Shown: positions 35,287 through 50,622 of the stretch, in pieces
Layout of the letters: every line of letters starts with the position of its first letter
Numbering within the stretch: position 1 is the first letter of the stretch
Virus record (IMG/VR): IMGVR_UViG_3300033143_006101
Location: 124,001 to 188,000 of that record
Length of the DNA: 64,000 nucleotides
Reading direction: 5' to 3' (one strand)
The notes under the pieces: generated by a model
Seen by the model: only the letters and a program-made list of their open reading frames with translations
Databases searched by the model: none
What the model was told of the DNA's origin: nothing
Made by a program: the position numbers and the translations under genes

Positions 35287-35880
35287 CTACATTCTCCTTA
35301 TATGAAATCTATTAGTTATTATATAATTATTCTTCACTTGACTTTCAAAGTAATCATCAATGACCATAGTAGCAAAATTAACCATAAAATGTATGAAAGG
35401 AATTGCACTTCTTACTTCACAGATATCTTCTGCATCCGGATCCACACTTCCAGGTACAGTGTACTTCTCATCCCATGTTACTTCCCCTGACAATTCCGGA
35501 GAGAAGCCTATATGCAAGCAAGCAACATCTTTAGATAATTCAGCCACTAGACTTCTGGATTCTTTATTATCAAAACAATCCAATACTAACACATCCTTTT
35601 TATCAATACCATCTAAAATATCAATTATGTCCGTAAACTTTTCTATCTTCTTTTGAATGGGAGTATACTTCATCTTTCTCACAAACCTCGGGAACACTGC
35701 CTGCATAGCCATTGTCTTATACAATCCAATATGCTCTAAAAAATAGGGTTGAATAGGAATATTTCTGTCCTCTACCTCATCACAATCCACCCCAATATAC
35801 TCAAAATCTGAATACTTTTTAGCTAATTGAAGTAATAAATTCCCTCCCAATGCTCCTAACCCCATTACACATATTAACAT
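35287..35880 (-). CDS. ThiF/MoeB (E1-like) adenylyltransferase
   Basis: GLGALGG, DCDEVEDRNIPIQ, GLYK, DCFDNKESR, 'DICE' Cys. Confidence 0.88.
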   Translation of the reverse strand: MLICVMGLGALGGNLLLQLAKKYSDFEYIGVDCDEVEDRNIPIQPYFLEHIGLYKTMAMQAVFPRFVRKMKYTPIQKKIEKFTDIIDILDGIDKKDVLVLDCFDNKESRSLVAELSKDVACLHIGFSPELSGEVTWDEKYTVPGSVDPDAEDICEVRSAIPFIHFMVNFATMVIDDYFESQVKNNYIITNRFHIRRM

Positions 35881-35890
35881 TTTTTCCTCC

Positions 35891-36495
35891 TTAAATAGTT
35901 ACATGTTTCCAAATTTTACCATTTTTAATATCATAAATGTTTCTATAAGTAACACCATATTTTTTATATATTTGAGCAGGTTTACTACCATTACCCAATT
36001 CTTTTTTAATTTCCCGAACTTGTCTTTCAGTTAGTTTAGACACGCCTATGCGTTCGCCCTTAGCTTGCCTATTCCTTTTTACCATATCTTGTATATTATC
36101 ATAATACGTTCCTAATTCTAAATGTTCCGGATTTATACAATTTCTAATATCACATTTATGTCTTATAATTTTACCTTTAGGAATACTTCCTTTAAACTTT
36201 TCGTATATAAATCTATGAAGCATATATACAATAGTATCTAATTCAATATGAACGTACCCATCCGTACCTGCCTTGTGTGAAGTACAAACCCAATATTCAG
36301 ATAAACCGTCAACAAGTTGCTCCTTTTCCCATTCAATTTTCTTTTGTCCCCATACAACTTTCTCTTCATTTTTTTTAACAAACTTTCTATCGCATATTTC
36401 GAAACATTATAAATTTTTGCTATTTCAACATTGGAATGCAGATCAATCAGTTTACTAATTTCTTTAATCTCTTCCTCAGCCCACTTCTTTCTCAA
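35891..36495 (-). pseudogene. HNH homing endonuclease, frameshifted
   Basis: HRFIY...IRHKCDIRNCINPEHL; N-terminal part in a different frame. Confidence 0.75.
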
Positions 36496-36715
36496 TCTAT
36501 ATCTCCATCATCTTCTTTATGATTTTGTATATGAGTTTCTCCTCTTGTCTTTATAACTTCAAGTTTTTCTATCTTAAAAACAATATGCCATATTATCCAT
36601 CCAATCCATAACCTATAAATACCCTGAACAGTATCATAATCAGTCCAACAATTTACTTTAGAATAGGTAATTCTTATTTTATTAAACAATAAATCTATAG
36701 CTCTATCTAATCTAC

Positions 36716-37219
36716 TCATATCTCCACTTTTATAATTTCTCCTTCAGGAGATAGCTCAGCTTCAATAGGATCCTCAAAGTCAGCCATCATACCTTCATAT
36801 ACTCCTTGCCATGTCTCTCTACTCTGCCCTTTAGGATCATTCATTCTATTATCAACATTATTCTGAGTCTCAGTAAAATGAACTAATACTATCTTCATAT
36901 TCACACCACGATCTTGCCGAGCCATATCTACCAAATCTATCCAATCAAGTCTCTTCTTTCTAATAATATTCGTTTCATCTATAATAATATTAAAACCATA
37001 ATCGAATGCTGTTGTCACAATATCATAACAAGCTGATCGTATAAATGGTTCATACTTTTTATCAAAAACATACTTCCCTTTTATCATTGCTCTAAGAGAA
37101 TCTCTATTTACAATCACAACATTGTCCTCTTTAGCTTTTTCTTTAGCCCAGGTACTTTTTCCAGAACCTATTATACCACATAATATATAAACAGTTACAT
37201 CAGGTGTGTTTTCACTCAT
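36716..37219 (-). CDS. P-loop kinase (AAA_33, polynucleotide kinase-like)
   Basis: GIIGSGKST, NRDSLR, IIDETN. Confidence 0.8.
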   Translation of the reverse strand: MSENTPDVTVYILCGIIGSGKSTWAKEKAKEDNVVIVNRDSLRAMIKGKYVFDKKYEPFIRSACYDIVTTAFDYGFNIIIDETNIIRKKRLDWIDLVDMARQDRGVNMKIVLVHFTETQNNVDNRMNDPKGQSRETWQGVYEGMMADFEDPIEAELSPEGEIIKVEI

Positions 37220-37813
37220 CGAAGTTTGCCTCCTATTTTAATTATCTATTATCATCATCACAAGTGCTATAAAAGCAAAGCCCAGCCCTACAAAAGAAAG
37301 CCAACCAATATCTAATACCATAGATGCTATACTGCATGTAAGACTTATCCCAACTAAAACCCATCTGGTTGCTATATTATTTATTCTGCCCCAACTAATC
37401 ATTGAACTCTACCTCTTCCTCATTTTCCTTGTCTTTATGTATTACCCTAGAAGATCTATTAGATACATTTTTTCTCCATAATCACCCAGCTTATCTAATA
37501 CTTCCTTATCTGATGCCCCATCCTTAGCTTTTAATTCGGCCATCATAGTTCCATCTTTAAGAAAATAAGTATAACAATTTGAACAAAATTTATTTACAAA
37601 TTTACCAGCTATATCATACCCATCCCCATCTTTACGTTCTACAATATATCGATTTCTTTAGCTATAGTAGAAGCTTCTGTGACTAATCCCTCAGTTTTTT
37701 CGAGGGAATTATCTTCTTCTTTTCGATTAAGTGTGGGAAAGAAGAATTTTATAACAAATTTATATATTACCCACATTGCAAACACTATAAGAATTGCCCA
37801 AAGAACAAACATC

Positions 37814-38269
37814 TTATTCACCTCCATATGATAAATATTTTAAAAATAATAATTGATCACCAGTTAATCGTACTGGATATACCTTCTTTTCTAATAGTAA
37901 TTTCCCATGAGTATCACATCTAGTATTATCAAACCAATATCCAACCACATCATGTTTAACTGAAAATAAATCATCTTCATGAAACGTAATAATATTAAAG
38001 TAAATTACACATTCTAATGCAGTATGCCATCCTTGTACACAATTAAGATCTTTATCACTATATGTTGTCATCCCTGGGGGATGCACATGATAAAATTGTA
38101 AATCTTCCGGTATAAAATTCAGCCCTAATGTTTTAATAAAATTCCATGGACGAAAAAAATTAAACTCAACAGACCCAGCTTCTCCTATACTGTAATCTAT
38201 TATTCTATCATCATATGTAATTACTGCAGATTCAATCACTCCTATCATTCTCCTGTTAAATAACTCCAT
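37814..38269 (-). CDS. JAB/MPN+ (JAMM) metallopeptidase
   Basis: E...FYHVHPPGMTTYSDKD matches HxH-x7-SxxD. Confidence 0.75.
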   Translation of the reverse strand: MELFNRRMIGVIESAVITYDDRIIDYSIGEAGSVEFNFFRPWNFIKTLGLNFIPEDLQFYHVHPPGMTTYSDKDLNCVQGWHTALECVIYFNIITFHEDDLFSVKHDVVGYWFDNTRCDTHGKLLLEKKVYPVRLTGDQLLFLKYLSYGGE

Positions 38270-38694
38270 GCTTTCATATAACGACCAACACGTTCCATAT
38301 CCTTTTTTCGCATATCATGTCTGTTAATTATTCTACGTAGATCCATGTTATGTTCAAGATCTTTTATTTTCACCTTACGAGCAATGCTATGCTCTTTAAT
38401 AGCTGCTATCATATTAACATATCTTTCTTCTTTATCACTTCCACTATGGTTATTTTTATCTAACAATACTAATGCATCTCGTATCTCTTCTGTCAGACCA
38501 AAATTAGCAATTTGGGTAATAGTATAAGCAGTATCTTCAGTAACGTCATGTAATACTGCTACAATTCTCTCAGTATCAGTTTCCATTTGAGTCATAACAT
38601 ACAAAGGGTGTAAGATATATGGTCTGCCACTTAGATCTTTTTGTCCTACATGAGCTTCCATTGCTAATTGTATTGCCGACTCAAGCGTTATCAT
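38245..38694 (-). CDS. HD-domain hydrolase (RelA/SpoT hydrolase / Mesh1-like)
   Basis: AHVGQKD..GRPYILHP, AVLHDVTED, KVKIKDLEHN. Confidence 0.85.
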   Translation of the reverse strand: MITLESAIQLAMEAHVGQKDLSGRPYILHPLYVMTQMETDTERIVAVLHDVTEDTAYTITQIANFGLTEEIRDALVLLDKNNHSGSDKEERYVNMIAAIKEHSIARKVKIKDLEHNMDLRRIINRHDMRKKDMERVGRYMKAWSYLTGE

Positions 38695-38982
38695 TCTTTC
38701 TCTCCCAAATACAAGCCGATAAAGGTTTAAGTAATAAACCAATTCCTGATACTACTGATAGTTTAAAAAATTTCTTCCTGGATATTTTATTCATTATCAG
38801 GCCCCTCACATTCTTCAAGTATTTCCCACCAATCTTCTTCTGAAATCATTACATCTCCATACCAACCTTCTCCATTCCAAAGACCATTTGTTTGTAGTGC
38901 TACCATCCAATCAGATTGAGAACCTTTATAATCATCAGGTGGTATTGCTGGAAGATATTCTTTTTCCTTCTTAGTCATATTA

Positions 38983-39588
38983 TTACCTCGACATTTTATG
39001 TACTCTAATAGGTATTCGACTCAATGAATTTACTAAATCTTCATTCTTTATACGATAAGACATTGACAATTCCTTACTAACCTTTGCATACTCGGGGCTT
39101 TCTAACCAATCAACATATTTCATATCACCTCGAGTCTTATTACACTTTTTACAAGAAGTTATCAAATTCTTCTCTATTGAAGGACCTCCGTCTTTCCATA
39201 GTATTAAGTGATCTACTGTAAGAGGTACATCGTTCCGGCCACAGTATCGACAAGTATAATTATCTCTTCTATATACTGCCCAGGATACTCTTTGTTCTAT
39301 TTGTCTAGTTGTTTTTCGTAGTATAGCTTTACCTATTATTTTATTATCTCCCAATTCAGCCAAAACCTCTGTTTCCACGATATCCGTTTGCCGAAGAAAC
39401 TTTTTCCAGTCATCCTCATCCATCAAAAGAACCTTCATTTCATTACCGAGAGCCTCATCAAACTCGTCCGGAAAAAAACAAAGGTAGTCCCTACCATCTC
39501 CCGACCATATCGCACCCGAGATCTGTACTGTATTTCCTATATCCAATAAATTAATATCATCCAATTTCACAAAATCTTCATCTTGCAT
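38983..39588 (-). CDS. HNH endonuclease
   Basis: RDNYTCRYCG, TVDHL, GG, NLITSCKKCN. Confidence 0.85.
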   Translation of the reverse strand: MQDEDFVKLDDINLLDIGNTVQISGAIWSGDGRDYLCFFPDEFDEALGNEMKVLLMDEDDWKKFLRQTDIVETEVLAELGDNKIIGKAILRKTTRQIEQRVSWAVYRRDNYTCRYCGRNDVPLTVDHLILWKDGGPSIEKNLITSCKKCNKTRGDMKYVDWLESPEYAKVSKELSMSYRIKNEDLVNSLSRIPIRVHKMSR

Positions 39589-39937
39589 GATCTACCTCCA
39601 ACATTTTATATACTTTCTTTCCAGTTTTAGAATCAGGACATAATTCTAACACATCAACTTTTGATAAATCAAGACTTGGTGTATTAAATATCTCCAAGGT
39701 TCTTGCAAACACTTCATTTTTAAATTCTATATCCATATCACCCCAAGAAACACAGTGTACCGCCTGCAGAGTATTGTATATAGCAGAAGATGGGTGAATA
39801 TTTAAAATCTTACAGCAATTATCAATTGTACAGATACTAAAATGGGGTCCCTTAAACATATCTTTAAGACTAACCATGACAGCTTTTTTCTGAAAATCTA
39901 CAAGGGGCATTTTTGATGCATTATTAAATAATTCCAT
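39578..39937 (-). CDS. hypothetical protein
   Basis: ORF in operon. Confidence 0.55.
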   Translation of the reverse strand: MELFNNASKMPLVDFQKKAVMVSLKDMFKGPHFSICTIDNCCKILNIHPSSAIYNTLQAVHCVSWGDMDIEFKNEVFARTLEIFNTPSLDLSKVDVLELCPDSKTGKKVYKMLEVDHAR

Positions 39938-40189
39938 TGTACACCCACCCTAAATTCTTTTAAATCTCCACATTGCTCACATTCTAAAACAAATACTTCG
40001 CCTGTTTTATTTGTTTCTTTGGTCACCATATTCATAGATTCCAGCTTATAGCTTTCTGTTCTTTTCCATTTAGGATGTAAGCATGGAAGTACAGGTACTA
40101 ATCTTGCCAAACCACAATGCTTACAATATTGATATCCCTTTTCCACTCTATCATATTTATGAACACAAAGTTTACCTACTAACCAATTA

Positions 40190-40782
40190 ATCATAGCTAA
40201 AGATATCTCCAATTTTTACCATATTTTATAGAATATATAGTTTGAACCACTACATTATATTTTTTAGCTATTACACTACAACTAATTATTTTTAAATCTT
40301 TTTTAATTTGAATCACGTTTTTCTCTGTGAGTTTGACTAAAGGGTGTTTTTCTCCAATAGTATGCTTTTACTTCTTAAAATCTTATCATTAGCATTATCT
40401 TGATAAGTACCTGGATAGATATGATCTGGATTTATACATAATGAATTATCACATTTATGACAAATTATTTTATTTTGAGGAAATTTTCCAAATTTTTTCT
40501 CATAAAAATATTTTACTACTAAAAATTTTTTTCCATTCCTTTTTAAACGAGGATAGCCTCTAGTTAACGATTTTTTCTAGGAATTTTATAATAGTTTAAA
40601 GCACGTTCAATTGAACCAACACTCCTATTAAAATTTTTACTAATTTCTATATTGGTTAAATTTGTATGATTAACACAATATTTCAAATTTTCCAATTCTT
40701 GCCTAGTCCACTTCATCATCGTAATACCAGCCTTCTCTTTCTTTATTACGTCTTGTAATATATGTAACTCTTTCCCTCTCAT
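40190..40782 (-). pseudogene. degenerate HNH homing endonuclease fragments
   Basis: 'CHKCDNSLCINPDHIYPGTYQDN' readable near 40400-40470; broken frames. Confidence 0.65.
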
Positions 40783-41566
40783 ATTCTTTAGCGGTTAGCA
40801 CCATACTTGTTACATTAAATTTCCTATCTCCCCCACTTGTGCAAAACCCAGCTTCAATTGTTTGAAAAGTGGACGCATCCAAGACCGAATTATAAGTTCT
40901 CCCAGTCTCCTCCAATTGCCAATCAACAAACAATCTATTGCCAGTAATAGAATATTCCAAAACTTTACTACCTACATTTCCAAATGCTAAAGCTAATCTA
41001 CCAGGCAATGACTCTGCCCATTCTTTTACTTTCTTATCATATATAACTTTTTCATCTGCTTTACGAATTGCTTCTTTTTCTAGACTATGAAACAAGTAAA
41101 GAGTCTTGAGTTCAGGGGTCACTCCTTTCTTTTCTATGATGCTCCTATCATTATCAAATTCCGATTTTACATCATAGATAAAAGCATCCTCATAGTTTAC
41201 ACTATAGTAATATAAACAATTATCTTCCCAGAGGATTGCCTTAACAGCAGAAAATGTTGGAGCAGTATTAAAATGTAACACAGTCATCATATCAATGCCA
41301 AGTTTACGTTTACCTACATCAAAATTCTGGAAGATTAGATTATTATTATACGTATAACCTTTAATAGTTTTTGCTTTCGGAAATTCTATTTCCGGTGATA
41401 CTCCTTCAATACATCCACATTCATTACCATTAAGCTTAACTTTATACCAACCATAAATATGTGCATCACACATAGTATATTTCTTCCTGTTGTATTGAAA
41501 ACACCCATCTACAATAGGAACAATAACTTCTTTGGGTCCAACAAATTTATTAAAATCAATAGACAT
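40703..41566 (-). CDS. hypothetical protein, candidate E2-like/Cys carrier of the Ubl system
   Basis: C-terminal domain with 'IEAGFCTSGGDRKF'; function inferred from context only. Confidence 0.4.
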   Translation of the reverse strand: MSIDFNKFVGPKEVIVPIVDGCFQYNRKKYTMCDAHIYGWYKVKLNGNECGCIEGVSPEIEFPKAKTIKGYTYNNNLIFQNFDVGKRKLGIDMMTVLHFNTAPTFSAVKAILWEDNCLYYYSVNYEDAFIYDVKSEFDNDRSIIEKKGVTPELKTLYLFHSLEKEAIRKADEKVIYDKKVKEWAESLPGRLALAFGNVGSKVLEYSITGNRLFVDWQLEETGRTYNSVLDASTFQTIEAGFCTSGGDRKFNVTSMVLTAKEYERERVTYITRRNKEREGWYYDDEVD

Positions 41567-41963
41567 ACTCAGCTGGTTTCTCCGCTTTAGAAGGAACTTC
41601 TCTAGATATTCCTATAATCTCTTTTGATTCAAGTATATTACGATAGCAACTACATGCCTTTATTCTTAAACCTACTACTGTAAATTCATAAGTTTTACCC
41701 TTTTCTATATCAGAATATACATCACTACTATCACATTTCAATGCCCATATTTCATCTGTATTTTCTAATACTTCTTTATTTGTGAAAATGATATATTTAT
41801 CATCATCCCCATCTCGCTTAGTAACCTTATCCTTCACAGTAGCAACAACTGTATCCTGTGTTACTAAGTAGCATATAAGATCACCACATGCAAAAAGAAG
41901 AACAAGTACTATCCCGAGTATTATATGTGAACTATTATTATTCATCTTCTTTCTCCTTCTCAA
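41556..41963 (-). CDS. DUF1523-like membrane-anchored protein
   Basis: TM segment, then KYIIFT..EVLENTD...SSDVY...GKTY.F.V.G.R. Confidence 0.65.
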   Translation of the reverse strand: MRRRKKMNNNSSHIILGIVLVLLFACGDLICYLVTQDTVVATVKDKVTKRDGDDDKYIIFTNKEVLENTDEIWALKCDSSDVYSDIEKGKTYEFTVVGLRIKACSCYRNILESKEIIGISREVPSKAEKPAEYVY

Positions 41964-42402
41964 TTGTATGTTCTATCCCCAATTTTAAAATATCTCTTAC
42001 TTCCATAAGAAGCATACCTAACATATTCCTACCTCTACCATTACAAATACCCCAATAAGTATCATCCCAATTATTACCTTCTATTAATTCTAAATTATGA
42101 GTATCTAATAATCGTTCTTTTAGATCAGAATGCTGAGTAAATTTAAGTAAAAGACCTAAATACATTATACTATCTTTTACCTTTTCTCAATCTTCACGCA
42201 TTCTTACTTTTCTACCTAAACGTTTCGCACTTCCAGGTCCGGGTACTCGCCTTATCTCTTCATGATCAGCTTCGAATTTAGCTTTATGAGACTGAAAAAA
42301 ATGTTCATTAGTAGGATACATTTTACCATTATAAATCATTTCTGCTTTATAAAAATTAGACAGAAAATCATAAATACCTGAAAAATTATCGATATTTTCC
42401 AT
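41938..42402 (-). pseudogene. NADAR (YbiA-like) protein interrupted by in-frame TGA
   Basis: FLSNFY, EHFFQ..K, AKRLGR, RED*EKVKD (stop at conserved Trp, 42187-42189), KFTQH, LIEGN.W.D.YWG, GRNMLG. Confidence 0.85.
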
Positions 42403-42534
42403 TACCTCTTCTCCTGCTCTTAAGCTCTTGTAATACTTCATCTTTTAATTAATCATTCGATATAGTATTAAAATAATCTAGTAATAAGCATAACTCATAA
42501 TGTGCATAATGCTTTAAACACTCTATCTTATTTT

Positions 42535-42951
42535 CTATTTTCCTATCCCCACGTCCATCATTTCTCTCAATTGCCGAATCTGTTGACATCCGCACTCTCC
42601 TATCATTGCTATTGTTTTTTTCATATTTTTTTCGTTTAAAAAGAAATCTTCTAAATGCTCCAGCACATCTCTTATCCCTAATTCTTTAACAGTATCCTCA
42701 TGCACATAAGAAATAGGTCGCTTAAAAATACGACCCATTGCAATGTTTCTTCCCATTTCTTTATTATAATTCTTATCGGCAGGGTGAAGAACAGCTATAC
42801 CTACACGATAAGCCGAATCTATTTGTGCCATTACAATCGTAAATTTACGTCCACCATTCTTATGGCAGTGACGAATGTAAGGCGTTACTTCTAAATGATT
42901 ATTTTCATCATCTTGTGTATAACACAGTACTCCTCCAGCAAAAGTAACCAT
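42535..42951 (-). CDS. hypothetical phage protein
   Basis: 'GIAVLHPADKNYNKEMGRNIA' motif. Confidence 0.6.
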   Translation of the reverse strand: MVTFAGGVLCYTQDDENNHLEVTPYIRHCHKNGGRKFTIVMAQIDSAYRVGIAVLHPADKNYNKEMGRNIAMGRIFKRPISYVHEDTVKELGIRDVLEHLEDFFLNEKNMKKTIAMIGECGCQQIRQLREMMDVGIGK

Positions 42952-42964
42952 ATCATTCTCCTTA

Positions 42965-44617
42965 TTATTTTAATTTTATAGACTCATACCACCGTGGGAG
43001 TTCAAGAAGAGGAGTACCCATAATGTCATCAATTATAGACATTGCTCCCCTCATAGCATCCCGTACTGCTTGAGCTACTAAAGCACTTTCAGTTAATGTA
43101 TTAGGATCCACTCTACTAACAGGTATTCCTACAGCTTCGAGAGAATCAGATAGCCTTTCTCTACGAGTAGTAATTGTTCCTGGTGGAAACATTATTACCA
43201 CTGCAGCTTTAGGGCGACCAAGCCCCTTCTCATCACAGTTTTCAACTATTTGTCTGATAACACCAGTATTGTGATCTTCATCTGTAAGATAAATATCAAT
43301 TTCACAATTTAATTTACGAGCATCTTCATACCATGACAAACAATTTGTTCCATGACCACCACAATGAATACCATACAACCTTGCCATGAATGCATCCTTT
43401 TCAAATGTTTCAGGTAGATCTAACTCCCTCTTATCATCATCAAATAATCCCCAATGAAAATTCTCTTCTGGATTCTTAATGCATTCTGCTATAATAGAAC
43501 CACGTTCCTTAGCAAAGTTAATTGCATGCATCATAGAAGGGCTTGCATCTATATGAACAAACACTTTACCAAGATCACCTACAATTTCTTTTCTTTTGTC
43601 AGCACGAGCTTTCTTAAGTTCTTTACTAACATCTGCATCTACTTCAGTAGTAATTTTATCTACACGATCTAAAGCAGTCTTAGCAGTTTTAATCTTCTCT
43701 GTAAAGACTTCCATTATTTCCTTATCTTTAAGCAAACCTTCTTTATCAAAAAGTTCACGATAAATAACTGCTTGATCACCACTACATTGTTCAAGTACTG
43801 CAGCTGCAATAACTGGCGATATCTTTTTATTCAAAGCACCCAGTACACCCTGAGGTTTTAACTTCTCCTCACGGATCTTTTCTGCTATTGCAAGATCACT
43901 AAGCCCCTTGAAATTAAAGATTTCACTTTTCTCCGCAACTCTTCCGTCCTTTTGATCCCATCCAAACACAGCAACGGCTTCATCAGAAGGAGCTATATGC
44001 AAAGCCCTATACATATTCAACATAATCTTAGTAAAAGCTGCTTTTTTAATTCCTTCCAAAGCTTTTGGATTCTGTTCACGAAAACGAATATACTTCTTAC
44101 ATGCATTTTTAAGACTACGAGCGAAGTGTGTACCTTCTTTATACCTTGCACCAAGTGGCATCTTGAGATTTGCTATCGTAATCAAACGAGACACTAACTT
44201 TGGATCCATAGTTAATACAGCAGCCTGGGCAACTCTACGATAATTAGGTTTTTTATAATCACTGCCTTCTGAGAAAGGTGTACCATCTGCATCACTCAAA
44301 GAATTGATAAATGTAGATAGAACTTTTAAATCCTTTCCATCAGATTTAGTTATAGCCCAGCTGTTAAAATGAGCTAAAAAGACAGGATCTTGATCAGCAA
44401 GAGTTATAAAAGTATCAAGTATAGGTTGTAACCTTTGCTCTTGTACTTCAGGCACTTCTGTTATAGTCCCATCTGGATTACGCCGTTTTCTCATAATAGT
44501 CTGTCCATTCTGCAGGGTGTTCTTAGACCATACATGTGTACATCCACTGATAATTGTTTTATAAACATCTAAACGAGTTTCGTCGTTCAGATAAGCGAGT
44601 TGATTCTCTTGTGCCAT
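42965..44617 (-). CDS. Ro60/Rsr-like TROVE-vWA RNA-binding protein
   Basis: helical N-terminus with 'DPVFLAH', 'RSLKNA', 'RALHIAP'; C-terminal vWA MIDAS DASPS...T...TD; Y-RNA-like gene directly upstream. Confidence 0.7.
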   Translation of the reverse strand: MAQENQLAYLNDETRLDVYKTIISGCTHVWSKNTLQNGQTIMRKRRNPDGTITEVPEVQEQRLQPILDTFITLADQDPVFLAHFNSWAITKSDGKDLKVLSTFINSLSDADGTPFSEGSDYKKPNYRRVAQAAVLTMDPKLVSRLITIANLKMPLGARYKEGTHFARSLKNACKKYIRFREQNPKALEGIKKAAFTKIMLNMYRALHIAPSDEAVAVFGWDQKDGRVAEKSEIFNFKGLSDLAIAEKIREEKLKPQGVLGALNKKISPVIAAAVLEQCSGDQAVIYRELFDKEGLLKDKEIMEVFTEKIKTAKTALDRVDKITTEVDADVSKELKKARADKRKEIVGDLGKVFVHIDASPSMMHAINFAKERGSIIAECIKNPEENFHWGLFDDDKRELDLPETFEKDAFMARLYGIHCGGHGTNCLSWYEDARKLNCEIDIYLTDEDHNTGVIRQIVENCDEKGLGRPKAAVVIMFPPGTITTRRERLSDSLEAVGIPVSRVDPNTLTESALVAQAVRDAMRGAMSIIDDIMGTPLLELPRWYESIKLK

Positions 44618-44645
44618 AATAGTCTCCTCCCAAAATAATTTGTAA

Positions 44646-44780
44646 ATGGCAGTTCAAGTTGTAAAAATAGTTTTTTCAGTCCTCAAAACTGATGCTCTAC
44701 CCAACTGAGCTAATTACCGAATGGTTGGTAATGAGAGATTTGAACTCTCGGCTTGTATATTCTTACGATGGAACTGCCAT
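44646..44780 (-). ncRNA. Y RNA-like 1: bulged-C stem enclosing a circularly permuted tRNA (T arm, closed acceptor, D arm, anticodon arm)
   Basis: AUGGCAGUUC(C)A/UGAACUGCCAU; gagag-UUCAAAU-cucuc; auuacc-aaccauuc-gguaau; UAGCUCAGUUGGGUAGAGC; ucagu-uuugagg-acuga. Confidence 0.85.
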
Positions 44781-44787
44781 ATATAAA

Positions 44788-45078
44788 TCATCCTGCTTCA
44801 CTATTAGGTATTACATAGATATTGTGTCTATCTTCAGCTCTATGAATCTTATATATCCAACCAGTCCTATCATCCTTTATGTCTTTATCAAATACTTCAA
44901 CAAGCACCGGGCGAATTGTCTCAAGAATTTCTTCATCCGTAGAATCAAAAGAAAGCCCCAAATCACTAAGATCCCTTTGATAATCCTGTCTTTGAATAGG
45001 TACAATAAGCTTGTTACGAGCACCATCATCAAGAGGCGTAAGCTCTATTGTTGCAGGAACATTATTTTCAGTTGTCAT
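44788..45078 (-). CDS. putative ubiquitin-like (beta-grasp) protein
   Basis: 96 aa, beta-beta-alpha-beta-beta pattern, ends IYVIPNSEAG; near E1 and JAB genes. Confidence 0.55.
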   Translation of the reverse strand: MTTENNVPATIELTPLDDGARNKLIVPIQRQDYQRDLSDLGLSFDSTDEEILETIRPVLVEVFDKDIKDDRTGWIYKIHRAEDRHNIYVIPNSEAG

Positions 45079-48853: not shown

Positions 48854-48989
48854 TCGGGGAAGAAGGAGTTGAACCTTCGACATTCAGTTTCCAAATGCTT
48901 GTAAGATAATATTATGGGAACCTAAAAGGTTCAAGTTATACCATCTAGAAAACAACACACTGAGACTCTACCTACTGAGCTATTCCCCG
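48854..48989 (-). ncRNA. Y RNA-like 4: tRNA-Pro-like body with 63-nt Y module inserted in the anticodon loop
   Basis: CGGGGAA/UUCCCCG-A acceptor, D and T arms intact; insert 48896-48958 contains AACUUGAACC-uuuu-aGGUUCC and UACAAGC; UUUGGAA precedes the 3' anticodon strand. Confidence 0.8.
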
Positions 48990-48997
48990 TTTATTTT

Positions 48998-49128
48998 AAA
49001 GGAGTTCAAGTAATAGTTGCAATTAGTTTGCAAGTGAAAGATTTGAACTTTCGACCTAAAGTTTAATAGACTTTTGCTCTACCAACTGAGCTAATTTGCT
49101 TGTAAGCAACTATATAGGAAACTCCTTT
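48998..49128 (-). ncRNA. Y RNA-like 5: Y stem enclosing a complete unpermuted tRNA-like cloverleaf (49028-49100, anticodon ATT)
   Basis: AAAGGAGUUUCC/UGAACUCCUUU; auaguugc/gcaacuau; UAGCUCAGUUGGUAGAGC; aaagu-CUAUUAA-acuuu; gaaag-UUCAAAU-cuuuc. Confidence 0.8.
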
Positions 49129-49465: not shown

Positions 49466-50622
49466 TTACTTGCGGTACAGCGTCAGTTGAATCACTTCGT
49501 CTTTGAATTCTACAGCTTCACCGCGTAACAGTTTGCCATTCTTACCTTCTTCTTGAACTTCCCTAATCTCAATGATTTTAAAAGGAAGTTTTTGAGTCTC
49601 TCCGAAGATCACTTTCTCTTCAAATTTACAACCTAACTCCTTACCTATGAGTTTTTTTTTATCATCTCAGGTTTAAATTCAAAGATATTAGCCTCTTCTT
49701 TCTTTAGATAACTACTACCTTCTTTGGCAACTACATCTTCCTTTACTGCATTCCAAGAAGCAGGGAGATCATACACATCTACTCCCCTTATTTTATTCTC
49801 ATGAAGAAAAATAGCACCAACCTGATTCTCGATTGGTGGGATCTTCTTCATTACTTCTTTGATAAAAGCAGTCATGTCATCTAAAGCATCCACTAAGTCA
49901 TCAGACGCAGGAATATCCTCTATGTTCTCATCTGATGACTTGGATATTCTATTACGCCCTATTGGTGGTAGTCCAGATGGTCCACATGAACCAGCTACCC
50001 CAACAGGAGCAGCGTCCACCTCATCTGAACTTGAATCCTCTGAAGAATCACATAATGTAGGCAATACTTCATTGTCCATATCACTTATATTACATGAAAA
50101 AGATCTTCGAACAGGATTATGCTTATAAGACTTGATACGATCACCTCTACCAGTCTGTGCAAGATAGACTGCATTGTGATTGCTAACAGAATCCCAAGTA
50201 CTTCCTTGGCTAGAGAGATCTACGTCGAAGGGTGCTCGTCCACTATATTTCATCTCTGCCCCTTTTTGAGTCGGTTTAGATTGATGCACACAGTGAACAT
50301 TAATGCGAGTACTCTTACCAGGCATGATAAGGTAACTATGAATAGCAACCCGTTCCTGGGCTTTACCTCTGAAGAGTTCACCTCTACTAATAAATACAGG
50401 CGTGCCCTCATTGTTCTGAACATAAAGATAGTTTACCTGTCCGGTATCTTCTACCTTAATATCCTATGCCTCAGCAAACGTAATGTATTTACGTTTCTTT
50501 TTTGACTTCCTTGTTATTGGCACGATAACGTTTAGTGATTCCTCACTCATTCTCCAAGCCTCGCCCAAGACGAATCCATTCTTCTCGCTTGAAACGGACT
50601 TGATAAATTGTTGTATTGATAT
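49466..50622 (-). pseudogene. ARPP-1/DUF6569-like protein, disrupted
   Basis: 'YITFAEA*DIKVEDTGQVNYL..N....VFI..GELFRGKAQER...INVHCV'; in-frame TAG at 50464-50466, frameshift in A9 run at ~49655, ATA at the expected start. Confidence 0.6.

What the first reader, a model, noticed from the sequence alone, without database searches (positions are those of the whole stretch)
35287..45078. Dispersed phage ubiquitin-like conjugation set (Ubl, E1, JAB, candidate E2) linked to the Ro/Y RNA locus
Seen: co-oriented ThiF/E1 (35287-35880, with a free Cys in 'DICE'), JAB peptidase (37814-38269), a 287-aa protein with 'AGFCTSGGD' (40703-41566), and a 96-aa protein ending in Gly (44788-45078) directly upstream of Y1 and the Ro-like gene. 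I saw no thiamine, molybdopterin or sulfur-transfer genes in this window. Known: E1 plus JAB plus Ubl define prokaryotic conjugation systems, and bacterial versions such as Bil and CBASS Cap2/Cap3 are antiphage. Inference: a phage-encoded Ubl pathway in which the Ro-Y RNP selects substrates (RNA-guided, E3-like) or is itself modified. The Ubl and E2 assignments are contextual only.
Basis: partly seen in the sequence, partly recalled or inferred. Interest (0 to 1): 0.85.

Follow-up and report, generated by a model that had tools for sequence, protein, structure and literature searches.

The report
Phage ubiquitin-like system tied to Ro
A giant uncultivated phage carries a conserved gene set (a small ubiquitin-like protein ending in glycine, an E1-type activating enzyme, a JAB protease and a novel cysteine protein) that is fused or adjacent to a Ro60-like RNA-binding protein in dozens of related phages, which suggests an undescribed link between ubiquitin-like tagging and RNA quality control.

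Summary
All four ORFs are at the stated coordinates on the minus strand of a 253-kb jumbo-phage contig.

- **E1:** the ThiF call is solid. It passes the Pfam cutoff, and the family keeps the ATP-site residues and the 'DIC' Cys.
- **JAB:** the protein has an invariant E...HxHx7SxxD motif. Syntenic distant homologs pass Pfam Prok-JAB.
- **Ubl:** the 96-aa protein models as ββ-α-ββ with a flexible tail, which is β-grasp-like but only weakly. In relatives the same domain is free and ends exactly at Gly, or carries 1-17 junk residues, or is fused in frame to the Ro-like protein after an invariant PNSTAG. That is the pattern of Ubl precursors.
- **Candidate E2:** the 287-aa protein has a confident model with no UBC or other known fold. 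It has an invariant Cys and is ThiF's most faithful neighbour.

Of 34 window ORFs, only six recur in relatives: Ubl, Ro-like, p287, HNH, JAB and ThiF. Of 41 ThiF-anchored viral loci, 33 carry Ro-like, 37 p287, 32 JAB and 23 the Ubl.

Verdict: this is a real, conserved, apparently undescribed Ro-linked Ubl/E1/JAB module. Conjugation versus sulfur carrier, the targets and any E3-like role of Ro remain untested.

The parts
44788..45078 (-). Ubl-like small protein (96 aa), ending ...IPNSEAG followed by a stop
   Evidence: AF2 model with pLDDT 79; the core has ββ-α-ββ topology plus a flexible tail. Foldseek and protein-atlas neighbours are weak but nearly all β-grasp: PB1, protein G/L B1, Ubl domains, Prok_Ub. 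Homologs are free, carry a short tail, or are fused to Ro-like after an invariant PNSTAG. Distant homologs end ...RPEAVFG.
44643..44783 (-). YrlA-like Y RNA with a tRNA-like module, lying between the Ubl and Ro genes
   Evidence: Rfam YrlA at 29.1 bits, below the gathering score of 69 (E 0.009 over 16 kb; 1e-4 over 201 nt). MFE -42.2 kcal/mol, z -5.5, with a 10-bp terminal stem and T, acceptor-like and D hairpins. A YrlA-like hit also lies next to Ro in L005.
42965..44617 (-). Divergent Ro60-like protein (550 aa): helical N-terminal part plus a vWA domain with a DxSxS MIDAS motif
   Evidence: No Pfam or PDB sequence hit. 4 of 40 homologs hit Pfam vWA_Ro60, best E 1.5e-5. 61 of the 100 nearest protein-atlas clusters are TROVE/vWA_Ro60 at score 0.94. 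There are at least 186 homologs.
40703..41566 (-). p287: novel-fold protein with an invariant Cys242 in the motif aG[F/I]C[L/V]sGxD. It is a candidate thioester or persulfide carrier; the E2 label is unproven.
   Evidence: AF2 model with pLDDT 90, but no PDB or BFVD match (TM 0.18 or below). No Pfam, NCBIfam or PADLOC hit. G240 and C242 are conserved in 30 of 30 diverged homologs and D247 in 29 of 30. Present in 37 of 41 ThiF-anchored loci.
38983..39588 (-). HNH nuclease (201 aa) with a conserved N-terminal domain.
   Evidence: Pfam HNH E 2.6e-12. 41-61% identical copies lie immediately upstream of JAB-ThiF with overlapping stop and start codons in L003, L005 and L008. Found in 9 distinct relatives' loci.
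37814..38269 (-). JAB/MPN+ (JAMM) metallopeptidase (151 aa)
   Evidence: E13, H61, H63, S71 and D74 are invariant in 40 homologs. The family profile's weak PDB hits are 15 of 16 JAMM proteins, aligned on the motif. Syntenic distant homologs hit Pfam Prok-JAB at 31.3 and 30.2 bits against a cutoff of 25.
35287..35880 (-). Short E1-like ThiF-family adenylyltransferase (197 aa) with an invariant Cys154 ('DIC')
   Evidence: Pfam ThiF above cutoff. The family profile hits MoeB at 6.6e-12, and also UBA5, SAE2, ThiF, Uba4, TcdA, Cap2 and MccB. Invariant residues are GxGxxG, D32, D34, N40, Q44, K55, D101-C-x-D104-N105 and C154.

Best explanation
This is a phage-encoded ubiquitin-like (Ubl) modifier system that is built around a Ro60-like/Y RNA ribonucleoprotein.

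The modifier is a domain of about 70 residues with a ββ-α-ββ core and a short flexible tail ending in an invariant Gly. It is made in one of three forms: as a free protein ending at that Gly (as in this window), with a few extra C-terminal residues, or as the N-terminal domain of the Ro-like protein.

Proposed steps (all inferred):
1. The JAB metalloprotease trims the extension or cuts the fusion after the Gly, and may also reverse conjugation.
2. The short ThiF-type E1 adenylates the exposed Gly and takes it onto its invariant Cys154.
3. The Ubl is then passed on, probably through the invariant Cys242 of the novel 287-aa protein acting as an E2-like carrier.
4. It ends up on a target that is the Ro-like particle itself or something held by it.

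A conserved HNH nuclease travels with JAB and ThiF; its role is unknown.

Shown here: the domain identities of E1 and JAB, the precursor-like ends of the Ubl, the fusions to Ro, the conserved six-gene neighbourhood, and the invariant cysteines.

Inferred: cleavage, adenylation, thioester transfer, and the nature of the target.
For: **Precursor signature of the Ubl**
- After an invariant ...PNSTAG the relatives show an immediate stop, 1-17 unrelated residues, an in-frame fusion to Ro-like through a variable low-complexity linker, or a fusion to another vWA protein.
- Stops directly after the Gly are TAA as well as TGA.
- Distant homologs end ...RPEAVFG...LVKYG or ...VPVYG, with 0-5 extra residues.

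**Fold**
- ββ-α-ββ plus a tail. Structural neighbours are almost all β-grasp proteins.

**E1**
- Pfam ThiF above cutoff. The profile hits MoeB, UBA5, SAE2, Uba4 and Cap2.
- The ATP-site residues are invariant. Cys154 is invariant and lies 50 residues after the DxxDN motif.

**JAB**
- The JAMM motif is invariant, and syntenic homologs pass Prok-JAB.

**Linkage**
- Of 34 window ORFs, only Ubl, Ro-like, p287, HNH, JAB and ThiF recur in relatives' loci (23, 23, 15, 9, 12 and 14 distinct loci). The other 28 ORFs recur in 0-2.
- In 41 ThiF-anchored IMG/VR loci (ThiF 21-46% identical), Ro-like is in 33, p287 in 37, JAB in 32 and the Ubl in 23. Among all the related loci examined, the usual arrangement is the same strand and the order Ubl, Ro, p287, JAB, ThiF.
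- The block stays together after inversion (L029-33) and rearrangement (L012, L013).

**p287**
- Cys242 is conserved in 30 of 30 homologs.

**Precedent**
- Bacterial vWA conflict systems with Ubl/E1/E2/JAB, in which JAB is predicted to free an embedded Ubl (PMC7159879).
Against: - No sequence similarity of the 96-aa family to any known Ubl, ThiS or MoaD family.
- The Foldseek matches are not significant (E 0.27 or worse, TM 0.3-0.5).
- The tail ends AG, FG or YG, not GG.
- p287 has no UBC fold and no HPN motif.
- JAB presence does not track with whether the Ubl needs trimming: about 78% of extended or fused loci have JAB, against about 69% of exact-Gly loci (my tally).
- Some Ubl-Ro loci (L010, L024, L027) show no JAB or ThiF within 8-10 kb.
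- All loci come from related uncultivated phages, so part of the synteny may be inherited rather than selected.
- There is no biochemical evidence of any kind.
Confidence: 0.55

Rival explanations
1. Sulfur-carrier system. The small protein is a ThiS/MoaD/TtuB/Urm1-like carrier. JAB exposes its terminal Gly, as QbsD and Mec+ do. ThiF adenylates it. A persulfide, perhaps on p287 Cys242, converts it to a thiocarboxylate. That thiocarboxylate then donates sulfur to RNA (tRNA or Y RNA thiolation) held by the Ro-like particle.
For: - The Ubl + E1 + JAB triad with C-terminal trimming is equally the signature of bacterial sulfur-carrier pathways (established knowledge of CysO/Mec+, QbsE/QbsD and TtuB/TtuC).
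- The ThiF profile hits MoeB, ThiF and Uba4 as strongly as it hits conjugating E1s. The best NCBIfam matches are ThiS adenylyltransferases.
- The context is RNA-centred: a Y RNA, tRNA genes around the locus in the window and in relatives, a PNK-like kinase and an HD hydrolase.
- The p287 motif C-x-x-G-x-D resembles the active-site loop of the rhodanese domains of Uba4 and MOCS3 (recalled from memory, not tested).
Against: - No cysteine desulfurase, rhodanese, PP-loop thiolase, ThiG/ThiH or MoaE was found among the window ORFs scanned.
- None of these belongs to the conserved six-gene set.
- p287 is not rhodanese-like by fold search.
- Known sulfur carriers almost always end in GG; these end in AG, FG or YG.
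- Fusion of a sulfur carrier to an RNA-binding vWA protein has no precedent that I know of.
Confidence: 0.2
2. There is no Ubl chemistry. The 96-aa unit is just an accessory N-terminal domain of the Ro-like protein, for RNA or partner binding, that is sometimes encoded separately. ThiF acts on RNA or a nucleotide, like TcdA (ct6A on tRNA) or MccB. JAB is a RadC-like protein. The genes are neighbours because they all serve phage tRNA or RNA repair.
For: - The domain is an integral part of Ro-like in about 33 of the 120 listed homologs.
- The ThiF profile also hits TcdA (1.6e-7) and MccB (3e-7).
- 4 of 40 JAB homologs have RadC as their best Pfam hit.
- tRNA genes and RNA-repair-type enzymes surround the locus.
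Against: This view does not explain three things:
- why free copies stop exactly at the conserved Gly, or carry only short non-conserved tails;
- why a variable low-complexity linker follows that Gly in the fusions;
- why a terminal Gly is the only universally conserved tail feature across very divergent homologs.

The invariant E1 Cys154 and the complete JAMM motif argue for active protein-directed enzymes.
Confidence: 0.15
3. Counter-defence decoy. The phage Ubl, E1 and JAB interfere with host Ubl-based immunity (Bil, or CBASS Cap2/Cap3). For example, JAB strips host Ubl from phage proteins, or the phage Ubl jams the host enzymes. On this view the proximity to Ro is incidental.
For: Host Ubl systems that target phage virions and prime cGAS-like enzymes are known (PMC10097602, listed). 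JAB deconjugases would be a logical phage answer. PADLOC gives weak hits of the ThiF to the E1 part of Cap2-type E1-E2 models (E 1e-4 to 7e-2).
Against: - The fusions and the strict adjacency of the Ubl to Ro-like argue that Ro is not incidental.
- The system encodes its own Ubl and E1, not only a protease.
- There is no similarity of the Ubl or p287 to Bil or Cap components.
Confidence: 0.05

Closest known systems
Archaeal SAMP/UbaA/HvJAMM1 and Thermus TtuB/TtuC systems (Ubl modifiers that need only an E1 and also serve as sulfur carriers)
   Same: A small β-grasp-type protein with a C-terminal Gly, a single short MoeB/ThiF-type E1 with a catalytic Cys, a JAMM protease for maturation or removal, no canonical E2 or E3, and links to tRNA biology.
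   Different: There is no sequence similarity of the Ubl. The tail is AG, FG or YG, not GG. The system is encoded by phages, is fused or adjacent to a Ro60-like vWA protein and a Y RNA, and has two extra conserved partners (p287 with an invariant Cys, and HNH).
Bacterial vWA-MoxR 'FtsH ternary' conflict systems with Ubl/E1/E2/RING/JAB (Kaur et al. 2020, PMC7159879)
   Same: A vWA-domain protein is genomically coupled to a Ubl-conjugation set. The Ubl is embedded in a larger polypeptide and is predicted to be released by the JAB peptidase.
   Different: Those systems have MoxR, FtsH, a recognisable E2 and a RING E3, and caspase-like effectors, and they are cellular. Here the vWA protein is Ro60-like with a Y RNA, there is no recognisable E2 or E3, and the host is a jumbo phage.
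Bil (BilABCD), Bub and type II CBASS Cap2/Cap3 antiphage Ubl pathways
   Same: E1-type adenylation, JAB-type deconjugase and Ubl-like transfer chemistry in the phage-bacterium conflict.
   Different: Those are host defence systems with a UBC-type E2, fused to the E1 in Cap2. The window ThiF matches only the E1 part of the PADLOC E1-E2 models, and weakly. p287 has no UBC fold. This set is phage-encoded and Ro-linked.
Bacterial and phage Ro60 (Rsr)-YrlA RNPs
   Same: A Ro-type vWA protein with a YrlA-like, tRNA-mimicking RNA encoded on the same strand and within a few hundred bases. This arrangement was reported for 254 bacteria and 22 phages (PMC4201824).
   Different: The protein is too divergent for the Pfam TROVE model or for PDB Ro60 sequences. 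No published Ro locus that I could find carries a Ubl fusion or an E1/JAB set. The Asgard-virus preprint (10.1101/2021.07.29.454249) lists both Ro60 and ThiF genes in Nidhogg viruses but draws no link between them.
Sulfur-carrier maturation systems CysO/Mec+/MoeZ and QbsE/QbsD/QbsC
   Same: The carrier is made with extra C-terminal residues, a JAMM protease exposes the Gly, and a ThiF/MoeB enzyme activates it.
   Different: Those sit in biosynthetic operons with sulfurtransferases and synthases. None of these is present here.

Membership tests
E1-like / ThiF-MoeB superfamily (PF00899) | Pfam ThiF model matched above the curated cutoff | tested here: met
   36.7 bits against a cutoff of 28.1, residues 3-118. 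The family profile hits MoeB (1jw9) at E 6.6e-12 and about 60 other E1-family chains.
E1-like / ThiF-MoeB superfamily (PF00899) | Nucleotide-binding GxGxxG, and the DxxDN / Arg-Lys adenylation-site residues | tested here: met
   G7, G9, G12, D32, D34, N40, Q44, K55, D101 and D104-N105 are invariant, and R39 and R109 nearly so, in 29 homologs. The position that aligns with the Arg of MoeB's 'LQRQ' is Ile in the window protein and not Arg in the family.
E1-like / ThiF-MoeB superfamily (PF00899) | Conserved Cys downstream of the adenylation site (the thioester or acyl-persulfide Cys of ThiF, MoeB-type enzymes and E1s) | tested here: inconclusive
   Cys154 is invariant in 29 of 29 homologs and lies 50 residues after D104. 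The profile alignments to PDB E1s stop before this region, so equivalence to the catalytic Cys rests on position only.
JAB/MPN+ (JAMM) metallopeptidases | E...HxHx7SxxD metal-binding and catalytic motif | tested here: met
   E13, H61, H63, S71 and D74 are invariant in 40 homologs.
JAB/MPN+ (JAMM) metallopeptidases | Significant match to a curated JAB model | tested here: inconclusive
   The window protein has no Pfam hit. The family profile gives only sub-threshold PDB hits, of which 15 of 16 are JAMM proteins. Syntenic distant homologs (L070, L074) hit Prok-JAB at 31.3 and 30.2 bits against a cutoff of 25.
Ubiquitin-like β-grasp modifiers / sulfur carriers (Ub, SAMP, ThiS, MoaD, TtuB) | β-grasp fold | tested here: inconclusive
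   The AF2 core (pLDDT about 88) has ββ-α-ββ topology plus a tail. The best Foldseek and protein-atlas neighbours are β-grasp proteins, but with E 0.27 or worse and TM 0.3-0.57.
Ubiquitin-like β-grasp modifiers / sulfur carriers (Ub, SAMP, ThiS, MoaD, TtuB) | Flexible C-terminal tail ending in Gly, made free or as a precursor with removable extensions or fusions | tested here: met
   The terminal Gly is conserved in every family member found. It is followed by a stop, by 1-17 junk residues, or by fusion to Ro-like or another vWA protein. The tail is AG, FG or YG rather than GG.
Ubiquitin-like β-grasp modifiers / sulfur carriers (Ub, SAMP, ThiS, MoaD, TtuB) | Sequence membership in a known Ubl, ThiS or MoaD family | tested here: not met
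   No Pfam, NCBIfam, PHROG or PADLOC hit. The profile against the PDB finds nothing relevant.
Ubiquitin-like β-grasp modifiers / sulfur carriers (Ub, SAMP, ThiS, MoaD, TtuB) | C-terminal adenylation by the cognate E1 | not testable with these tools
   This needs biochemistry or a multimer model.
UBC-type E2 conjugating enzymes | UBC fold and an HPN-Cys active site | tested here: not met
   The pLDDT-90 model of p287 has no meaningful PDB or BFVD match (TM 0.18 or below). There is no UQ_con or Prok-E2 Pfam hit and no HPN motif in the sequence.
UBC-type E2 conjugating enzymes | Invariant catalytic Cys | tested here: met
   Cys242 is conserved in 30 of 30 diverged homologs, within aG[F/I]C[L/V]sGxD. 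This is compatible with an E2-like carrier but is not specific to one.
Ro60 / TROVE-vWA proteins with Y RNA | TROVE (HEAT-ring) domain | tested here: inconclusive
   No Pfam TROVE hit for the window protein or for 40 homologs. The profile against PDB Ro60 structures gives no hit. Protein-atlas feature neighbours are mostly TROVE/vWA_Ro60 clusters, score 0.94. No structure model was made.
Ro60 / TROVE-vWA proteins with Y RNA | C-terminal Ro60-type vWA domain with MIDAS | tested here: met
   D357-x-S359-x-S361 is invariant. vWA_Ro60 is the only Pfam family hit by more than one homolog: 4 of 40, best E 1.5e-5. One distant homolog hits it at 8.9e-5.
Ro60 / TROVE-vWA proteins with Y RNA | Y RNA (YrlA-type) encoded next to the gene on the same strand | tested here: inconclusive
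   YrlA at 29 bits, below the gathering score of 69, but with the expected T / acceptor-like / D module and closing stem, z -5.5. A YrlA-like hit at E 8e-5 lies beside Ro in L005. None was found in six other loci.
Bil / Bub / CBASS Cap2-Cap3 antiphage Ubl systems | Match to the system's E1-E2, E2, Ubl or DUB models, and location in a host defence operon | tested here: not met
   PADLOC gives only weak E1-part hits (E 1e-4 or worse) for ThiF and nothing for the Ubl or p287. The genes sit in a 253-kb phage contig.
Thiamine / molybdopterin / Cys sulfur-carrier pathways | Co-located sulfurtransferase and synthase genes (ThiG/ThiH, MoaE, CysM, IscS, rhodanese) | tested here: not met
   None appears among the Pfam hits of the 85 window ORFs scanned. 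In one search, 6 of 31 families were not displayed.

The most novel reading that the evidence does not exclude
The Ro60-like/Y RNA particle is a dedicated platform for a new kind of Ubl chemistry. The Ubl is released from Ro by JAB and activated by the E1. It is then transferred, through the novel Cys protein p287, onto RNA-bound clients or even onto RNA itself (for example the tRNA-like Y RNA or damaged tRNA ends). That would amount to RNA-guided, or RNA-directed, ubiquitin-like tagging in a virus of prokaryotes. p287 would then be a new, non-UBC class of Ubl-transfer enzyme.
Probability: 0.15. Interest if true: 0.95.

Novelty: new variant of a known kind. Interest (0 to 1): 0.8.

Why it matters
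The function of Ro60 is still poorly understood, in bacteria and in humans. Nothing I found in the paper library connects Ro/Y RNA particles to ubiquitin-like modification.

This module has a Ubl fused to Ro, a conserved E1, a JAB and a novel Cys protein, in dozens of large phages. That gives a compact and genetically tractable system in which to ask three questions:
- What does a Ro RNP recruit?
- What minimal machinery suffices for Ubl transfer without a UBC E2?
- How do jumbo phages use protein tagging, or sulfur relay, together with RNA repair during infection?

It also adds a new Ubl family and a new conserved Cys enzyme of unknown fold.

Tried and rejected
**Searches that found nothing useful**
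- Megablast of the region against GenBank phages: no match.
- Single-sequence scans of IMG/VR with ThiF and Ro-like found only the source contig.
- Ro-like protein and its 40-sequence profile against PDB sequences: no Ro60 hit.
- p287: the PDB profile search, the protein atlas, Foldseek against the PDB and Foldseek against BFVD were all uninformative. The top Foldseek hit (9bjz_B, a chain of an E2-containing complex) has TM 0.12 and rmsd 27 Å, and I rejected it as meaningless.
- Ubl profile against the PDB: nothing.
- Scans of 185,579 species genomes: no Ubl relative, and only one 2-kb MAG fragment for Ro-like. So no host could be named.
- The JAB alignment was too diverse for a pattern scan.

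**Ideas considered and set aside**
- PRTRC system: ThiF hits TIGR03736 only at E 0.054. Rejected.
- TGA might be read as Trp, so that the 96-aa ORF would not end at the Gly. Rejected because TGA ends 11 of 38 long minus-strand ORFs. Reading through gives 27 unrelated codons in a frame different from Ro. Homologs stop at the same Gly with TAA.
- The Y RNA as an intron splitting a fused gene. Rejected because both ORFs have their own Shine-Dalgarno sequence and ATG, and they lie in different frames.
- JAB presence against the need for trimming: no usable correlation.

Full report
**Source and layout.** The window is part of IMGVR_UViG_3300033143_006101, a 252,876-bp viral contig. Elsewhere the window encodes family-A DNA polymerase, DnaB, primase, RecA, a HerA-like helicase, tubulin, DNA methylases and NAD-salvage enzymes, so this is a jumbo phage. 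It has no close relative among GenBank phages. Every gene in the finding lies on the minus strand.

**Checking the observation.**
- ORF 35287-35880 (197 aa) matches Pfam ThiF above the curated cutoff (36.7 against 28.1 bits).
- ORF 37814-38269 (151 aa) has no Pfam hit but carries HVHPPGMTTYSDKD, which is the JAMM signature HxHx7SxxD.
- ORF 40703-41566 (287 aa) contains AGFCTSGGD.
- ORF 44788-45078 (96 aa) ends ...IPNSEAG followed by TGA.
- The 170 bases between that ORF and the 550-aa gene 42965-44617 hold a 141-nt RNA. It has a 10-bp terminal stem (AUGGCAGUUC / GAACUGCCAU) that encloses a T-arm, an acceptor-like hairpin, a D-arm and a fourth hairpin (MFE -42.2 kcal/mol, z = -5.5).
- That RNA matches Rfam YrlA end to end, but below threshold (29.1 bits against 69).
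- The 550-aa protein has no TROVE hit and no sequence match to solved Ro60 structures, even as a 40-sequence profile.
- Three things do point to Ro60. The protein has an invariant DxSxS MIDAS motif. vWA_Ro60 is the only Pfam family hit by several homologs (4 of 40). Its nearest protein-atlas clusters are dominated by TROVE/vWA_Ro60 families.

I therefore accept 'Ro-like with a Y RNA' as probable rather than proven.

**E1.** The ThiF belongs to a family of short (185-200 aa) proteins found on large metagenomic contigs.
- Invariant across 29 members: GxGxxG, D32, D34, N40, Q44, K55, D101-C-x-D104-N105 and Cys154, which is the Cys of 'DICE'. R39 and R109 are nearly invariant.
- The family profile hits MoeB (6.6e-12), UBA5, SAE2, UBA6, ThiF, Uba4, NAE, TcdA, Cap2, MccB and PaaA.
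- It is therefore a bona fide E1-superfamily adenylation domain, roughly equidistant from the known branches.
- It lacks the CxxC zinc pairs and any rhodanese or UFD extension.

**JAB.** A full HMMER scan of 1.8 billion representatives found 165 homologs.
- In 40 of them E13, H61, H63, S71 and D74 are invariant.
- The profile's weak PDB hits are 15 of 16 JAMM proteins (Rpn11-like, AMSH, Sst2, STAMBP, RadC), aligned on the motif.
- More distant homologs in the same syntenic position pass Pfam Prok-JAB (31.3 and 30.2 bits against 25).

**The 96-aa protein is the key result.**
- tblastn against context loci showed its homolog fused in frame to the N-terminus of the Ro-like protein in L005 (613 aa) and L007 (616 aa).
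- Of the 120 listed Ro-like homologs, 33 are about 600-645 aa long.
- All 21 long forms I aligned carry the domain. It ends in an invariant IPNSTAG, followed by a variable low-complexity linker of 0 to about 25 residues and then the Ro core 'LSYLxDxERL'.
- A scan of JGI metagenomes with the domain alignment brought 23 more loci. In every locus long enough to tell, the domain lies directly upstream of the Ro-like gene or is fused to it.
- After the Gly comes one of four things: an immediate stop (TAA or TGA); 1, 2, 3, 7, 16 or 17 unrelated residues; the Ro-like protein; or, in L035, a different vWA protein.
- In much more distant phages the small ORF just upstream of Ro aligns collinearly. It ends ...ITVRPEAVFG...PKSGFGNI...APLVKYG or ...HPVPVYG, again with 0-5 extra residues.
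- A terminal Gly that is invariant while everything after it is dispensable is the classical signature of Ubl and sulfur-carrier precursors.

**Fold of the 96-aa protein.** The AF2 model (26-sequence alignment, pLDDT 79, core about 88) has a disordered N-terminus, a β-hairpin, a helix, two further strands and a flexible 5-residue tail. Foldseek finds nothing significant (best E 0.27). The hit list is nevertheless almost purely β-grasp: Par3 PB1-like domain, protein L and G B1 domains, Ubl domains of UBLCP1, PLIC-2 and OASL, and RA domains. The atlas structure search adds Prok_Ub and AUX/IAA PB1 clusters at TM 0.46-0.57. There is no sequence similarity to known Ubls. So the fold evidence is consistent but weak. 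The Ubl assignment rests mainly on the tail pattern and the partners.

**The 287-aa protein.**
- The model is confident (pLDDT 90): an N-terminal β-rich domain, a 35-residue helix, then a four-stranded β-meander, the Cys loop and a helix.
- It matches nothing in the PDB or BFVD (TM 0.18 or below), and nothing in Pfam, NCBIfam, PHROGs, PADLOC or the atlas.
- It is therefore not a recognisable UBC E2.
- Across 30 diverged homologs, G240 and C242 are conserved in 30 of 30 and D247 in 29 of 30, within aG[F/I]C[L/V]sGxD.
- It is the gene most faithfully linked to ThiF.
- An E2-like thioester carrier or a persulfide carrier are both possible. A new fold is likely.

**Co-occurrence.**
- Seven loci fetched through ThiF homologs showed the order Ro-like, gap, p287, HNH, JAB, ThiF. 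HNH, JAB and ThiF often have overlapping stops and starts.
- I searched 34 window ORFs (32.6-48.8 kb) against 37 related loci. Only six recur: Ubl and Ro-like in 23 distinct loci each, p287 in 15, ThiF in 14, JAB in 12 and HNH in 9. The other 28 ORFs recur in 0-2.
- Ubl, Ro and ThiF were search anchors. p287, JAB and HNH were not.
- An IMG/VR scan with the ThiF alignment gave 41 further loci, with ThiF identity down to 21% and contigs up to 572 kb. HMM searches of their ORFs found Ro-like in 33, p287 in 37, JAB in 32 and the Ubl-like ORF in 23. Most keep the same strand and order as the window.
- The set survives inversion of the p287-ThiF-JAB block (L029-33) and relocation of HNH and ThiF (L012, L013).
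- In at least 7 of 9 large contigs, ThiF and Ro-like homologs report identical longest-contig lengths, so they share a genome even where they lie more than 10 kb apart.
- In the window the module is spread over 9.8 kb, against about 5.5 kb in L005. This is because non-conserved genes are interspersed: an HNH_3 endonuclease, an AAA_33/PNK-like kinase, an HD hydrolase, a NADAR gene and small ORFs.

**Interpretation.** The simplest reading is a phage Ubl system of the 'E1 plus JAMM' type, like archaeal SAMP/UbaA/HvJAMM1 or Thermus TtuB/TtuC, that is physically coupled to a Ro-like RNP. The fusions are a Rosetta-stone argument that Ubl and Ro act together. The precursor-like tails call for a protease, and JAB is the only one in the set. 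The E1 has what it needs to adenylate a C-terminal Gly and hold it on Cys154. p287 offers a second invariant Cys.

The data do not settle four points:
- whether the activated Ubl is conjugated to proteins (to Ro itself or to its clients) or serves as a sulfur donor;
- whether p287 is the transfer enzyme;
- what HNH does;
- whether the Y RNA guides anything.

Against the sulfur-carrier rival, the window and the conserved set lack any sulfurtransferase or thiolase, and the tail is not GG. The enzymology of the triad is identical, though, and the neighbourhood is rich in tRNA genes. The 'no Ubl chemistry' rival cannot explain the tails.

**Literature.** Full-text searches found no paper that links TROVE/Ro60 with ThiF or E1, JAB or Ubl.
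- The jumbo-phage survey mentions TROVE proteins only as RNA-repair platforms (PMC7824862).
- An Asgard-virus preprint lists Ro60 and three ThiF genes in Nidhogg viruses without connecting them.
- Kaur et al. 2020 describe cellular vWA-MoxR systems with Ubl/E1/E2/RING/JAB, in which JAB is predicted to free an embedded Ubl (PMC7159879). This is the nearest conceptual precedent.
- YrlA RNAs next to Ro60 genes in phages are known (PMC4201824).

**Verdict.** The core of the interpretation (a Ro-linked phage Ubl/E1/JAB set) is supported by strong comparative evidence. The E2 label and the E3-like mechanism are not. I rate it a new variant of a known kind of system, of high interest, and one that needs biochemistry.

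Noticed in passing
window 41938-42441 (-): A NADAR-domain gene is split into two ORFs by an in-frame TGA at 42187-42189. The stop falls exactly where the intact homolog in L004 has a conserved Trp ('LRPDWEEIK' against 'MRED*EKVK'). This is either a TGG>TGA pseudogene or local TGA read-through. TGA is otherwise used as a stop in 11 of 38 long minus-strand ORFs.
   Followed up: partly
window 48854-48989 (-): A tRNA gene (Rfam 49 bits) carries a 68-nt insertion in the anticodon loop, and ARAGORN does not call it. Similar tRNA hits of about 140 nt recur in related phage loci (L020 5615-5754 and 9164-9300; L022 2226-2366). tRNA genes cluster around the Ubl-Ro locus in many relatives.
   Followed up: partly
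window 49028-49100 (-): ARAGORN calls a tRNA-Asn with the unusual anticodon ATT (A at position 34).
   Followed up: no
window 37814-38269 (-), C-terminus; alignment A4: The JAB family has its own conserved C-terminal motif, 'LKxLSYG', followed by a non-conserved tail of 0 to more than 20 residues (the window protein ends ...LSYGGE). This looks like a second 'conserved Gly plus disposable tail' pattern. It may be self-processing or tail mimicry.
   Followed up: no
L035 132-1070 (+): Here the Ubl-like domain (...IPNSTAG) is fused to a separate 217-residue vWA protein with a DRSGSMS MIDAS motif, not to the Ro-like protein. The Ro-like gene follows immediately downstream.
   Followed up: no
window 38983-39588 (-) and L003, L005, L007, L008, L012, L013, L020: The HNH nuclease with a conserved N-terminal domain of about 90 aa (motifs GNxIQxxGxIWxG and RQTDxxETE) is more conserved (41-61% identity) than JAB. 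It is often translationally coupled to JAB-ThiF. Its role in the module is unexplained.
   Followed up: partly
window 35891-36223, 36716-37219, 38245-38742 (-): Three genes are inserted between module genes only in this phage: an HNH_3 homing-type endonuclease, an AAA_33/KTI12/PSTK-like kinase (weak polynucleotide kinase similarity), and an HD phosphohydrolase (phrog_990). They are RNA-repair-flavoured additions.
   Followed up: partly
window 49645-50325 (-): A 226-aa protein with an ARPP-1 domain (ARG and rhodanese-phosphatase-superfamily-associated protein), E 8e-8.
   Followed up: no
window 24-33846 (ORFs not pinpointed): The replication region includes a tubulin/FtsZ-family protein (as in nucleus-forming or PhuZ-type jumbo phages) and Hint plus LAGLIDADG hits, which suggest an intein in one gene.
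   Followed up: no
L008/L011/L042 (IMGVR_UViG_3300049215_000686): In this 157-kb phage the Ro-like gene is N-terminally shortened (438 aa, matching from residue 118) and no Ubl-like ORF was detected. Even so, p287, HNH, JAB and ThiF are intact.
   Followed up: no
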